From: Sminthopsis crassicaudata
Lineage: Eukaryota
Assembly: GCF_048593235.1 (NCBI RefSeq)
Contig: NC_133620.1
Location: 276,287,765 to 276,351,764 of the forward strand
Reading direction: 5' to 3'
Length of the DNA: 64,000 bases
Numbering within the stretch: the stretch's first letter is position 1; each line of letters opens with the position of its first letter. This document shows positions 13,101-16,100 of this stretch, one piece after another. The position numbers and the translations under genes are program-made. The notes under the pieces were generated by a model, which did not search any database, was not told where the DNA came from, and saw nothing but the letters and a program-made list of their open reading frames with translations.

Positions 13101-16100
13101 ATGTAATAAGTTATCATTATCAATAGCTCCCTAGAAGAGGAAGGGCCCGTAGATGAGCTCTTAGTGCTAATGGAATTAGCACAGAAGCTGGTATTAGGAC
13201 TCAGTAGGCTGTGCCAGAGCAGACCCACAGTAACCTGCTCAGCAGTTATGTCTACAGCAAATATGAGCCACATGCCAACAATGGATATTCAACCAGCCTA
13301 GCCCTTGTAGTGCCTCAGAATACTTGCTCCCCAAAAGCACCATTGCTAGAGAAAATAATGGTGAAGGGTTAATTGCCCACAAAGCATAGAATGATCCCAG
13401 CTATTTCAGCTGGCTGAGGCTTCTAGTGTCTGGGCAGGAAAGGAATTAATACAGTCAAAGCTACCATTTTCCTCTCACCCATATGTATGGGTCATTTTGG
13501 TCCTCTTCACAAAACTTCCACTCTAGGGAGAAGCTGTACAATCCCCGGCTGGGTGGCCTTTATGGAAGTGACCTTATATATCTAGGTCTTGGCTGTAAAT
13601 GAGGTTGCTCCCTCTCACTCACAGTTTCATATTGAATGGGACTGAGCTTTTTCTTTCTAAAAGAACCCAGACGGGGAGATATGTTGGGCTTAGGAGAGGA
13701 CTTGTTGCAGAAGTGGGGCAAAAGGAGATGTGATAGGAGAAGCTATAGACAAATCATTCAGCAAGGTACTTTATTCTCACAATATCATGGTGAGTTTAGA
13801 TGGTGAGATGTGGACTACATGACAATATGATGAGTTCAGAATTTATTAACCAACTAGACCCTCTTGGAAGATTGGTTGATGGGAAGTTATTTCAGGCTGT
13901 GTTCCTGACTCTTTTCTTTTTATTCTGAATAAGGTGATATTTAATAAGCCTAATGAATCTGAAGTTCTCAAGGCAGCTTCAGCAAAATAACAGGACAAAT
14001 GTAGGATACCAGCAACACAGAGAGTAATCAAAGTGAAAAATATTTTGGGCAAGTAATTTTCCTCCTCTGTAAAATGAGGAAGTTATTCTAGAGAAGCTTT
14101 GGAGAATGTAAATTTAATTTAAATTTAAGGTTTAAATTTTAAATTTTAATTTAATTTAAATTTTTTTTATTTGCGGCAATCGGGGTTAAGTGACTTGCTC
14201 AGGTCACAGACCTAGTGTCAAATGTTCAAAGCCACATTTGAACTCAGAACCTCCTGACTCCAGGGTGCTTCATCCACAGTATCACTTAGCTGCCTCTAAT
14301 TTAAGACTTTTTAATAAATCATTTAAAATTTGAGGGTTTTAGCGAACTGTATCCTTATTCTGAGGGAGTCATGTGACACAGAATCCTAAAAAGTGTATGT
14401 GGTCTTCAGCTGCATTTAAAGAAGCATTTAAAGAATGAGGGAGGTATGATTGTCTTAATGTACTGTGCTGTGCTTTTATCGAACCACATCTGGAGCTTGG
14501 AGTTCAGTGATAGGTCAGGATATATACTGAAGGGCGACATTCATAAACCAGAACATATTTAAAGGACAATGACAGGAGTAGCTGACATTTATGAAGAACC
14601 CTGAATGTGGTAAACTGCTCAGCATACATTATCTCATTTAATCCTCCTAAAAAACCCTGAAAAACCAACTTCTTATTATACCCATTTTACAGATGAAGAG
14701 ACTAAGGTTCAAAAAGCAACTTGCCCAAGGTTTCACAAGCTAGTGTCTCAGTCAGGATTTGAAATTCAGGTCTTCCTGACTCCAATTTTTGTGCTCAATA
14801 CTTTATATTATTCTGTCTCTCAATGGAGAGAGCTCTGAAAAGTTTGTCATAAAGAGAAATGTTGAAAGAATAGGAATAGCAATCAAGTTTGCAGAAGAAG
14901 AGGAACCAATAGAGCCTAGTCTTCTACTATCTTTTTTTTCCACAGTGATCTAAATTGGTCTTAAGCTTTTTCCACTCATGATCCCTTTTCACCTAATAAA
15001 TTTTTACACAACTCCAGATATATAGGTGTTTAAAATAGCTGTACAAATCAAACATCTTCTGATAATAAGTCATAATTTTGTGACCCCTCACATTCAGCTA
15101 TACAATGGGGTTGCAATCCACAGTTTAAAAAGCTTTGATCTATAAACTGCACAGAATTTTTGAATTCTGATCAAGAAAGCCAAGAAAGAGTCCCAATGAA
15201 TTATTTTTCCAGCCCATGACAGCTTAGGGTGACAGGAAGATGGGTCTACAGACCTGGAATAGGATCGGACCAGGAACGTGAGACATGGGACTGAAAGAGG
15301 ACACCAGGAAAGGAAGAATCAGAGTCAGAGAGATCTCCAAGGACCCCAAACTAGCCCTTGGGTCAAGAACCCTCTATCCAGTTCCAGTTTACTGATCCAG
15401 GATGGAGAGGAGCAATTGCTGTTAACTCTAGTTGAACCCTGTATTGAACAAGGGACTGTTTAAGACAATGTAGCTGTATGGCTCTGAGCACAGAAGCACA
15501 GCAGGGACTCAATCCTAGCCTTTAACTCAGGTACTAAACCCTCAGTGAAGTAACCAGGGCAAGAATTCCAGACCAAAGGGGAACCAGCACTTCAGGTGCT
15601 CTAAACCTTCAGAATTTCTAACAGGCTAGTAGTATATGACTACAGTAGCATTCTGTAGATACTTCCAAACAAAGACAAGCTAACAGACCTGGAACTGATA
15701 AAGAAATTGCAGAGTTCAGACAAGGAGAGCTGAGAACAGAGCTCTCCCTAAATCATACTCACTTTGGGAGCACTGAAAGCTTACAGGCCCCCAGACTGAA
15801 TTGTGAAAGCAATAAGACATAAGAAGAAAAAAACTCAGGCCAGACATCCCAGCCACCTCCAGAGCCAGCACTAACATCAAGTCCAAAGTAAAAAAGAAGG
15901 TTGGGAAGCATAAGAAATTAAAAAAAAAAAAATACAGCCATAAAAGACTACTATGATAACAATAAATACTGAAGAAGATAATAAATTAAAAACATTTACA
16001 AGCAAAGACTCAAAGAAAAATGTATTTTGGACACAAATACAGTAATAATTCCTAGAAAAGTTAAAATGAGTTTTATAAAGAGCTAAAAAAATTTTTAAAA

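What the first reader, a model, noticed from the sequence alone, without database searches (positions are those of the whole stretch)
13127..13375. Fossil duplicate of CUL7 coding exon 6, with possible reciprocal retention versus eutherians
Seen: 227 nt after coding exon 5 lies a segment alignable to the working exon at 22479 (tggaattagcacagaagctggt vs tggagttggcagagaagctggt; acccacagtaacctgctcagc vs acccacaatgacctgcttagt; acttgctccccaaaagcacca vs acctgcagccctgaggcccca). It has its own AG acceptor (13125-13126), about 4 extra nt near the start, a 1-nt deletion near 13225, and a stop at 13154. The dead copy ([20 protein letters not shown]) resembles my recollection of human CUL7 (ELAQDLLLTL..VYKKYGPEALAG). 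The live copy ([20 protein letters not shown]) resembles CUL9. Inference: an old exon duplication in which marsupials and placentals kept different copies; if still spliced in, it would act as a poison exon.
Basis: partly seen in the sequence, partly recalled or inferred. Interest (0 to 1): 0.72.

Follow-up and report, generated by a model that had tools for sequence, protein, structure and literature searches.

The report
Dead CUL9 exon pasted into CUL7
The dead "second exon 6" in this marsupial CUL7 gene is real, but it is a decayed copy of the neighbouring paralogue CUL9's exon 6, left behind by an old CUL9-to-CUL7 sequence transfer, and not an ancient CUL7 exon that placentals kept and marsupials lost.

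Summary
Window 13127-~13440 is a decayed copy of the exon at 22479-22773 (local score 63 against 18±2 for shuffles). It has an AG acceptor, frameshifts and stops.

The interpretation mostly fails. The window is the fat-tailed-dunnart CUL7 locus (MRPL2 – CUL7 – TMEM121L/RRP36). All 11 annotated marsupial CUL7 proteins use the live exon ("6b").

The dead copy ("6a") is CUL9-type:
- Together with the intron before it, it is collinear with dunnart CUL9 intron 5 + exon 6 (intron z=41).
- Its tail carries a CUL9-only motif, found in 75 of 88 CUL9-length proteins and 0 of 120 CUL7 proteins (tail z=16.5 against CUL9, about 0 against 6b, platypus and dugong).

After 6a come a copy of the intron-3 tail, then a vestigial second copy of the exon-5 end, then the original CUL7 intron 5. 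Together these form a 779-nt insert. Dromiciops shares the insert, including an in-frame TAG. The Tasmanian devil lacks it exactly. Platypus and dugong CUL7 have a single exon 6.

Best reading: a scar of a CUL9-templated repair or gene-conversion event in a gene pair that still converts (9971-12490 is 99.4% identical to CUL9, introns included). No RNA evidence shows 6a being spliced. Ordinary in kind, and a neat case.

The parts
9971..12490 (+). Context: recent CUL9-identical tract of CUL7, running from 170 nt upstream of the ATG through exons 1-4 with their introns
   Evidence: 14 differences in about 2,520 nt against the dunnart CUL9 locus L001 2829-5350, with a sharp left edge at 9970/9971
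12718..12899 (+). CUL7 coding exon 5. Its last ~120 nt plus the first ~45 nt of the intron (12777-12943) form a second near-identical CUL9 patch.
   Evidence: Matches human CUL7 466-525 and CUL9 469-526 and tblastn hits. There are 3 differences in 167 nt.
12900..13126 (+). CUL9-type intron 5 ('5a'), the first part of the 779-nt insert
   Evidence: Local alignment to CUL9 intron 5 gives z=40.9. There is no similarity to the devil, platypus or dugong CUL7 intron 5. It is orthologous to L003 4419-4648 in Dromiciops.
13127..13440 (+). Pseudo-exon 6a: a decayed copy of CUL9 exon 6 (L001 5963-~6245) that lacks the last ~50 nt and the donor site
   Evidence: 77% identical to CUL9 exon 6 against 61% to live 6b over the core. 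The tail gives z=16.5 against CUL9 and about 0 against 6b, platypus and dugong. Lesions are listed.
13154..13156 (+). TGA, the first stop in the frame entered from exon 5 through AG 13125-13126
   Evidence: Read directly from the sequence
13387..13389 (+). In-frame TAG (CAG in CUL9), shared with the Dromiciops 6a
   Evidence: Alignments A1 and the guided translation
13484..13612 (+). Decayed copy of the last ~200 nt of intron 3 (equivalent to window 12198-12344 and L001 5058-5204)
   Evidence: z=8.5 in dunnart. The Dromiciops orthologue L003 4994-5188 against L001 5021-5216 gives z=53.
13645..13678 (+). Vestigial second copy of the exon-5 3' end. Its donor has degenerated (AT at 13679-13680).
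   Evidence: Alignment A2; blastn 12883-12909 against 13662-13688, 85%. The devil's exon 5 joins the downstream intron exactly here.
13679..22478 (+). Original CUL7 intron 5, swollen by A-rich LINE/SINE insertions
   Evidence: 92% identical to the devil intron directly after exon 5; composition and poly-A-tailed repeats
22479..22773 (+). Live CUL7 exon 6 ('6b')
   Evidence: Letter-for-letter in S. crassicaudata cullin-7 isoform X3 (P0193). The same exon type is in all 11 marsupial CUL7 proteins examined. The 6b clade has support 98/99 (protein) and 100/99 (DNA).

Best explanation
The segment is a non-functional pseudo-exon. It is a copy of the paralogue CUL9's intron 5 plus most of CUL9's exon 6, written into CUL7 just after exon 5.

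Shown: CUL7 and CUL9 in this marsupial exchange sequence by interlocus gene conversion, so the 5' third of CUL7 is almost identical to CUL9, introns included.

Inferred: at or shortly before the split of Dromiciops from Australian marsupials, a break near the 3' end of CUL7 exon 5 was repaired using CUL9 as template. Copying ran on through CUL9 intron 5 and about 280 nt of CUL9 exon 6. It then switched back to the tail of intron 3 and rejoined CUL7 non-homologously about 35-40 nt before the end of exon 5. An alternative version is that a larger CUL9 5' block was joined non-homologously into CUL7 and a secondary deletion followed.

The result is a 779-nt insert flanked by two copies of the exon-5 end. 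The native CUL7 exon 6 (6b), further downstream, stayed in use. The passenger exon arrived without a donor site, gained a stop shared by dunnart and Dromiciops, and has decayed neutrally since. In the Tasmanian devil lineage the insert was removed precisely, most simply by recombination between the two flanking repeats.
For: - **Locus identity.** MRPL2 lies upstream and TMEM121L/RRP36 downstream. The gene has CUL7 architecture, ends at 38120 and has no RBR. The live exon equals S. crassicaudata cullin-7 P0193.
- **Collinearity with CUL9.** Window 9971-13405 aligns as one block to CUL9 locus L001 2829-6237. Homology stops at about 13425-13440.
- **Intron 5a.** Against CUL9 intron 5 it gives z=40.9, with no similarity to the devil, platypus or dugong CUL7 intron 5.
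- **6a tail.** Against the CUL9 exon-6 tail it gives z=16.5; against 6b, platypus and dugong it gives z<1. The encoded motif (..SQLFNQL..) is in 75/88 proteins >2000 aa (CUL9) and 0/120 proteins with the CUL7 C-terminus.
- **Trees.** 6a (dunnart and Dromiciops) groups with marsupial CUL9 at 78/88 (protein) and 70/87 (DNA). The 6b clade is 98/99 and 100/99.
- **Insert structure.** There is a vestigial exon-5 end plus the original intron at 13645 onward. The intron-3-tail copy gives z=8.5 in dunnart and z=53 in Dromiciops.
- **Distribution.** Dromiciops has the same insert with the same TAG. The devil lacks exactly the 779 nt.
- **Outgroups.** Platypus and dugong CUL7 have one exon 6, 258-348 nt after exon 5.
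- **Ongoing conversion.** There are 14 differences in 2,520 nt, plus further tracts at 93-96%.
Against: - The AU test on the 85-column exon alignment does not reject 6a + 6b (p=0.08) or 6a + eutherian CUL7 (p=0.13). The case rests on flanks and structure more than on the exon tree.
- The left edge of the original transfer has been overwritten by later conversion, so a one-step event cannot be told apart from a two-step event (block replacement plus deletion).
- Only one CUL9 locus (dunnart) was read, so the direction of transfer is inferred only from the CUL9-only motif.
- No didelphid, diprotodont or bandicoot locus could be read.
- The devil's lack of the insert is read as a secondary loss on phylogenetic parsimony alone.
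Confidence: 0.78

Rival explanations
1. Intragenic tandem duplication within CUL7. The unit runs from the intron-3 tail, or the exon-5 end, to most of exon 6. The upstream unit was later converted by CUL9, and the second copies of exons 4-5 were deleted.
For: There are two exon-6 copies in tandem order. A second copy of the exon-5 end and of the intron-3 tail lies between them, in the order a tandem unit would give. The AU test does not reject 6a + 6b (p=0.08).
Against: Intron 5a and the intron after the vestigial exon-5 end share only about 10 nt. The regions after 6a and after 6b are unrelated (z=1.2). The CUL9-only tail of 6a has no counterpart in 6b. To place it there, a later conversion tract would have to end exactly at the duplication junction, with no homology beyond it.
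Confidence: 0.14
2. One reading: an exon duplication older than the marsupial-placental split, after which placentals kept the upstream copy and marsupials the downstream one.
For: 6a sits where the single exon 6 of platypus, dugong and CUL9 sits, 204-348 nt after exon 5. It shares ELAQ and VY.KY with eutherian CUL7. The AU test does not reject 6a + eutherian CUL7 (p=0.13).
Against: The shared residues are ancestral: they also occur in sauropsid homologues, monotreme CUL7 and marsupial CUL9. 6a groups with marsupial CUL9, and all marsupial copies group apart from eutherian CUL7 (91/88). 6a carries a CUL9-only tail and a CUL9 intron. The insert is bounded by duplicated exon-5 ends and is absent from the devil. 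6a, Dromiciops 6a and CUL9 form a near-trichotomy, which dates the event near the Australidelphian radiation and not before the therian split. No second copy was found in platypus or dugong, though a relic that old might be undetectable.
Confidence: 0.03
3. Assembly artefact: CUL9 sequence mis-joined into the CUL7 locus.
For: The 5' 2.5 kb is 99.4% identical to CUL9, the kind of repeat that can confuse assemblers.
Against: 6a itself is 23% diverged from CUL9 and carries its own lesions. An independent assembly of another species (Dromiciops) has the same insert at the same place, with a shared stop.
Confidence: 0.01

Closest known systems
Interlocus (non-allelic) gene conversion between nearby paralogues, as described for globin genes, CYP21A2/CYP21A1P and PMS2/PMS2CL (from general knowledge, not tested here)
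   Same: Mosaic tracts that include introns are near-identical between paralogues against an older, diverged background. The tracts have sharp edges, and the paralogues lie in one chromosomal neighbourhood.
   Different: The old tract ends non-homologously. It added a paralogue's exon beside the native one instead of replacing it. No published report for CUL7/CUL9 was found (0 papers with CUL7 + CUL9 + 'gene conversion').
Template-switch repair insertions (MMBIR/FoSTeS-type complex rearrangements; general knowledge)
   Same: The insert is built from two non-adjacent pieces of one template locus (intron 5 + exon 6, then back to the intron-3 tail), and it duplicates the sequence at the break.
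   Different: This is an old, fixed germ-line event inferred from decayed sequence. Junction microhomologies can no longer be read with confidence.
Tandem exon duplication giving mutually exclusive exons
   Same: Two homologous copies of one exon lie in series in one intron-exon context.
   Different: The upstream copy comes from the paralogous gene, has no donor site, is disabled in both species that carry it, and appears in no annotated protein.
Poison (NMD) exons
   Same: If used, the AG at 13125-13126 would bring in a stop after 9 codons.
   Different: There is no conservation of splice sites (the AG is lost in Dromiciops). The polypyrimidine tract is weak and there is no inherited donor. 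No transcript evidence was found and the sequence is not conserved above the neutral level.

Membership tests
Pseudo-exon / decayed exon copy | Significant homology to a working exon | tested here: met
   Score 63 against 18±2 for shuffles versus 6b. 77% identity to CUL9 exon 6 over 220 columns.
Pseudo-exon / decayed exon copy | Disabling lesions and absence from annotated products | tested here: met
   Frameshifts, TGA at 13154 and TAG at 13387. None of 11 marsupial CUL7 proteins or their isoforms contains it.
Interlocus gene-conversion / paralogue-templated tract | Collinear homology to the paralogue that includes non-coding flanks | tested here: met
   Window 9971-13405 aligns to L001 2829-6237 in one block. 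Intron 5a gives z=40.9.
Interlocus gene-conversion / paralogue-templated tract | Donor-specific characters present in the tract | tested here: met
   A CUL9-only tail motif is present (75/88 CUL9-length proteins against 0/120 CUL7). The 6a tail gives z=16.5 against CUL9 and about 0 against CUL7 exons.
Interlocus gene-conversion / paralogue-templated tract | Homologous replacement, with both tract ends in homology | tested here: not met
   The 3' end is non-homologous. The native exon 6 survives downstream and the exon-5 end is duplicated. This makes it a templated insertion rather than classical conversion.
Intragenic tandem exon duplication (mutually exclusive exons) | Both copies and their flanks derive from the same gene's unit | tested here: not met
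   The flanks of 6a are CUL9-like and unrelated to the flanks of 6b.
Intragenic tandem exon duplication (mutually exclusive exons) | Both copies intact, with usable splice sites, in at least some species | tested here: not met
   6a is disabled in dunnart and Dromiciops and absent in the devil.
Poison exon | Inclusion seen in transcripts | tested here: inconclusive
   Only Logan contigs of four probable RNA runs could be laid. None lies on 13127-13440. The one contig reaching 12899 continues into CUL9 exon 6.
Poison exon | Sequence and splice sites conserved above the neutral level | tested here: not met
   Dunnart 6a against Dromiciops 6a is 75% identical, the same as the flanking intron (73-74%). 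The acceptor AG is not kept in Dromiciops.

The most novel reading that the evidence does not exclude
Marsupial CUL7 and CUL9 are a natural, still-active system of gene conversion between paralogues that in human lie head-to-head about 130 kb apart (from memory). In effect, the whole 5' third of marsupial CUL7 is CUL9 sequence. The 779-nt insert is a datable, multi-template-switch repair scar of that process. It was fixed before the Australidelphian radiation and later excised precisely in the devil.
Probability: 0.55. Interest if true: 0.5.

Novelty: new member of a known kind. Interest (0 to 1): 0.4.

Why it matters
For the finding itself, an attractive hypothesis (reciprocal retention of duplicated exons between marsupials and placentals) is replaced by an ordinary mechanism, a scar of sequence transfer from a paralogue.

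The wider observation has practical consequences:
- Marsupial CUL7 is being homogenised by CUL9, from about 170 nt upstream of the start codon (9971) through exon 4 (to ~12490), including introns, and in several downstream tracts.
- This probably contributes to databases naming marsupial CUL7 products 'cullin-9' or 'cullin-9-like'.
- Orthology-based inferences about CUL7, the 3-M syndrome and placental-growth gene, should not treat the marsupial N-terminus as an independent CUL7 lineage.
- The insert is a clean presence/absence marker (present in Dromiciops and dunnart, lost in the devil).

Tried and rejected
- **RNA evidence.** The run search found no run on record as RNA. Four probable RNA runs kept as contigs gave no contig over 6a, and gave one CUL9 mRNA contig. 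Splicing of 6a therefore stays untested.
- **Loci that could not be read.** Gracilinanus, Petaurus, Trichosurus, Macrotis and Orycteropus returned 'file too large'. The Vombatus and Macrotis X2 products were not on record. No didelphid, diprotodont or bandicoot DNA was read.
- **AU tests.** On the 85-column exon alignment they were not decisive.
- **Homology searches that found nothing.** These were the region after 6a against CUL9 intron 6, the region after 6a against the region after 6b, and intron 5a against the original intron.
- **Scenarios considered and dropped.** An inversion between CUL7 and CUL9 would put SRF, not MRPL2, next to the gene. A mis-assembly is excluded because Dromiciops shares the insert.
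- **Human sequence.** No human genomic sequence was fetched or compared. Human CUL7 and CUL9 entered only as PDB chains returned by the structure-sequence search.

Full report
**What is there.** Window 13127-13375 does align to the exon at 22479-22773. The local alignment of 13134-13262 with 22484-22611 scores 63, against 18.2±2.2 (max 27) for 500 shuffles.
- AG at 13125-13126
- extra bases just after it
- a 1-nt deletion near 13220-13225
- a TGA at 13154 in the frame coming from exon 5

The copy is longer than stated. It runs to about 13440.

**Which gene.** tblastn of full-length family members places a CUL7-type gene at 10143-38120 with no RBR part.
- Exon 5 is 12718-12899, the live exon 6 is 22479-22773, and exon 7 is 23432-23614.
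- An MRPL2-like ORF lies upstream. From memory, this is the CUL7 neighbourhood.
- The live exon is contained letter for letter in 'cullin-7 isoform X3 [Sminthopsis crassicaudata]' (P0193), so the window is dunnart or very near.
- The 9.3-kb gap between the two copies is AT-rich, A-skewed and full of poly-A-tailed repeats.
- Exons were searched one at a time by reference.

**Which copy is which.** Every annotated marsupial CUL7 uses the live type ('6b'). This was seen in dunnart, devil, Petaurus, Macrotis, Vombatus, Dromiciops, Gracilinanus, Monodelphis, Trichosurus, Notamacropus and koala. Marsupial CUL9 has another type (dunnart P0181, and the Ensembl fragments of opossum, wombat and devil). 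The dead copy ('6a') is of that CUL9 type along its whole length.

They are ancestral states. The live exon does match human CUL9 better than human CUL7 (E=1.4e-9 against 0.014). So does much of the marsupial gene: for example, exon 2 is 92% identical to a CUL9 representative and 66% to dugong CUL7.

**The flanks decide it.** The dunnart CUL9 locus was fetched as L001. Window 9971-13405 aligns to L001 2829-6237 as one collinear block. Identity along the block is a mosaic:

| Window segment | Identity to CUL9 |
|---|---|
| 9971-12490 | 14 differences in ~2,520 nt, introns included |
| Intron 4 | 61-68% |
| 12777-12943 | 3 differences |
| Rest of intron 5 | about 69% |
| 6a | 74-79% |
| Beyond ~13425-13440 | none |

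Further tests of the flanks gave the following:
- The intron before 6a matches CUL9 intron 5 (z=40.9). It does not match the intron 5 of devil, platypus or dugong CUL7.
- The 3' tail of 6a matches the CUL9 exon-6 tail (z=16.5). It does not match the tails of 6b, platypus or dugong exon 6 (z<1).
- The tail encodes a decayed version of a motif (..SQLFNQL..). That motif is present in 75 of 88 proteins longer than 2000 aa in the set (CUL9) and in 0 of 120 proteins ending with the CUL7 C-terminus.

Homology to CUL9 ends about 50 nt before CUL9's donor site, so 6a arrived without a donor.

**What follows 6a.**
- Window 13484-13612 is a decayed copy of the last ~200 nt of intron 3. It gives z=8.5 in dunnart. 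The orthologous Dromiciops piece against CUL9 intron 3 gives z=53.
- Next, at about 13645-13678, comes a second, degenerate copy of the exon-5 end. Its donor is spoiled (AT). The intron after it is unrelated to CUL9 intron 5.
- In the Tasmanian devil (L002), exon 5 runs straight into exactly this second intron (92% identity). The devil has no intron 5a, no 6a and no intron-3 copy.

The 779 nt from 12900 to 13678 are therefore an insert flanked by direct repeats of the exon-5 end. The sequence from 13679 on is the original CUL7 intron 5, leading to the native exon 6b.

**Age and distribution.**
- Dromiciops (L003) has the same insert at the same place: intron 5a, 6a at about 4656-4950, the intron-3 copy and the vestigial exon-5 end, plus 6b at 14996-15313.
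- Its 6a has its own deletions (11 nt and 2 nt). It shares with dunnart the CAG-to-TAG stop (window 13387-13389) and the missing exon end.
- In the DNA tree, dunnart 6a, Dromiciops 6a and CUL9 exon 6 form a near-trichotomy (70/87), apart from a 100/99 clade of 6b.
- The event therefore lies at or shortly before the Dromiciops/Australian split. 6a was probably never functional in CUL7.
- The devil's lack of the insert is best read as a later precise deletion between the flanking repeats, because the dunnart belongs to the same family (Dasyuridae, from general knowledge).
- Platypus (L004) and dugong (L005) CUL7 have a single exon 6, 348 and 257 nt after exon 5, and no second copy.

**Trees and tests.** A protein tree was built from 39 exon-6 segments over 85 columns, with X at each break of the dead copies.

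| Group | Support |
|---|---|
| Eutherian CUL7 | 100/100 |
| Eutherian CUL9 | 99/98 |
| Marsupial 6b | 98/99 |
| 6a pair + marsupial CUL9 | 78/88 |
| All marsupial copies + monotreme CUL7, apart from eutherian CUL7 | 91/88 |

The AU test alone is weak: 6a + eutherian CUL7 gives p=0.13 and 6a + 6b gives p=0.08. The conclusion rests on the flanks, the CUL9-only tail, the duplicated exon-5 end and the devil's state.

**Mechanism.**
- Shown: 6a and its intron derive from CUL9. The insert has the composite structure described above. CUL7 and CUL9 still exchange sequence in dunnart, with further tracts at 28694-29853 (96%) and 30186-33105 (93-95%).
- Inferred: the transfer was either a single break-repair event templated on CUL9, with a backward template switch and a non-homologous rejoin inside exon 5, or a larger CUL9 5' block joined non-homologously and followed by deletion of the redundant exons 4-5. 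The two versions cannot be separated, because later conversion has overwritten the left side.
- An intragenic tandem duplication followed by conversion is less likely. The conversion would have to end exactly at the duplication junction and introduce a tail with no homology beyond it.

**Is it still spliced?** Evidence against use comes from the sequence only.
- The acceptor AG survives in dunnart, but behind a purine-rich tract. It is lost in Dromiciops.
- No donor was inherited.
- Conservation between dunnart and Dromiciops is neutral: 75% in 6a against 73-74% in the flanks.
- No run on record as RNA was offered. In four probable RNA runs kept as contigs, nothing lies on 6a. The one contig ending at 12899 continues into CUL9 exon 6.

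**Known or new.** No paper in the library combines CUL7, CUL9 and gene conversion. The family study read (PMC2785787) treats CUL7/PARC only as a chordate-restricted pair derived from gene fusions. An earlier scan note on this window says that the CUL7-position gene has CUL9-like sequence. The present work explains that note by conversion tracts. The kind of event (a paralogue-templated insertion that leaves a pseudo-exon) is known. This instance, and the concerted evolution of marsupial CUL7 and CUL9, appear to be undescribed.

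Noticed in passing
window 9971-12490 and 12777-12943: The CUL7 region from about 170 nt upstream of the start codon through exon 4, with introns, differs from dunnart CUL9 at only 14 of ~2,520 positions and has a sharp left edge at 9970/9971. A second patch covers the exon-5 end and has 3 differences in 167 nt. 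This points to very recent interlocus conversion.
   Followed up: partly
window 28694-29853, 30186-33105: These are further CUL7/CUL9 tracts at 93-96% identity that include introns. The background is 70-83% and limited to exons.
   Followed up: partly
window 31361-32640 (L001 18873-19800): The 37-bp minisatellite noted earlier by the scan lies inside one of the conversion tracts and has a counterpart array in CUL9.
   Followed up: no
L002 3673-3720 (Sarcophilus CUL7): The devil lacks the 779-nt insert precisely. Its exon 5 abuts the intron that in dunnart follows the vestigial exon-5 end. This looks like repeat-mediated excision.
   Followed up: partly
proteins P0179-P0200, P0299-P0301: UniProt/Ensembl entries named 'Cullin 9' of 1,300-1,700 aa from opossum, wombat and devil are a mixture of CUL9 fragments and true CUL7 products. 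NCBI names several marsupial CUL7 proteins 'cullin-9-like'. Conversion probably contributes to this mislabelling.
   Followed up: partly
window 13189 and 13358: There are donor-like GT sites inside 6a (CTG|GTATTA and ATG|GTGAAG). With the AG at 13126 they could define a cryptic stop-containing exon. No transcript evidence was available.
   Followed up: no
window 22271-22399: A SINE with a poly-A/CAA tail ends about 80 nt upstream of the live exon 6. Similar copies occur at 20067-20195 and many times in the Dromiciops locus.
   Followed up: no
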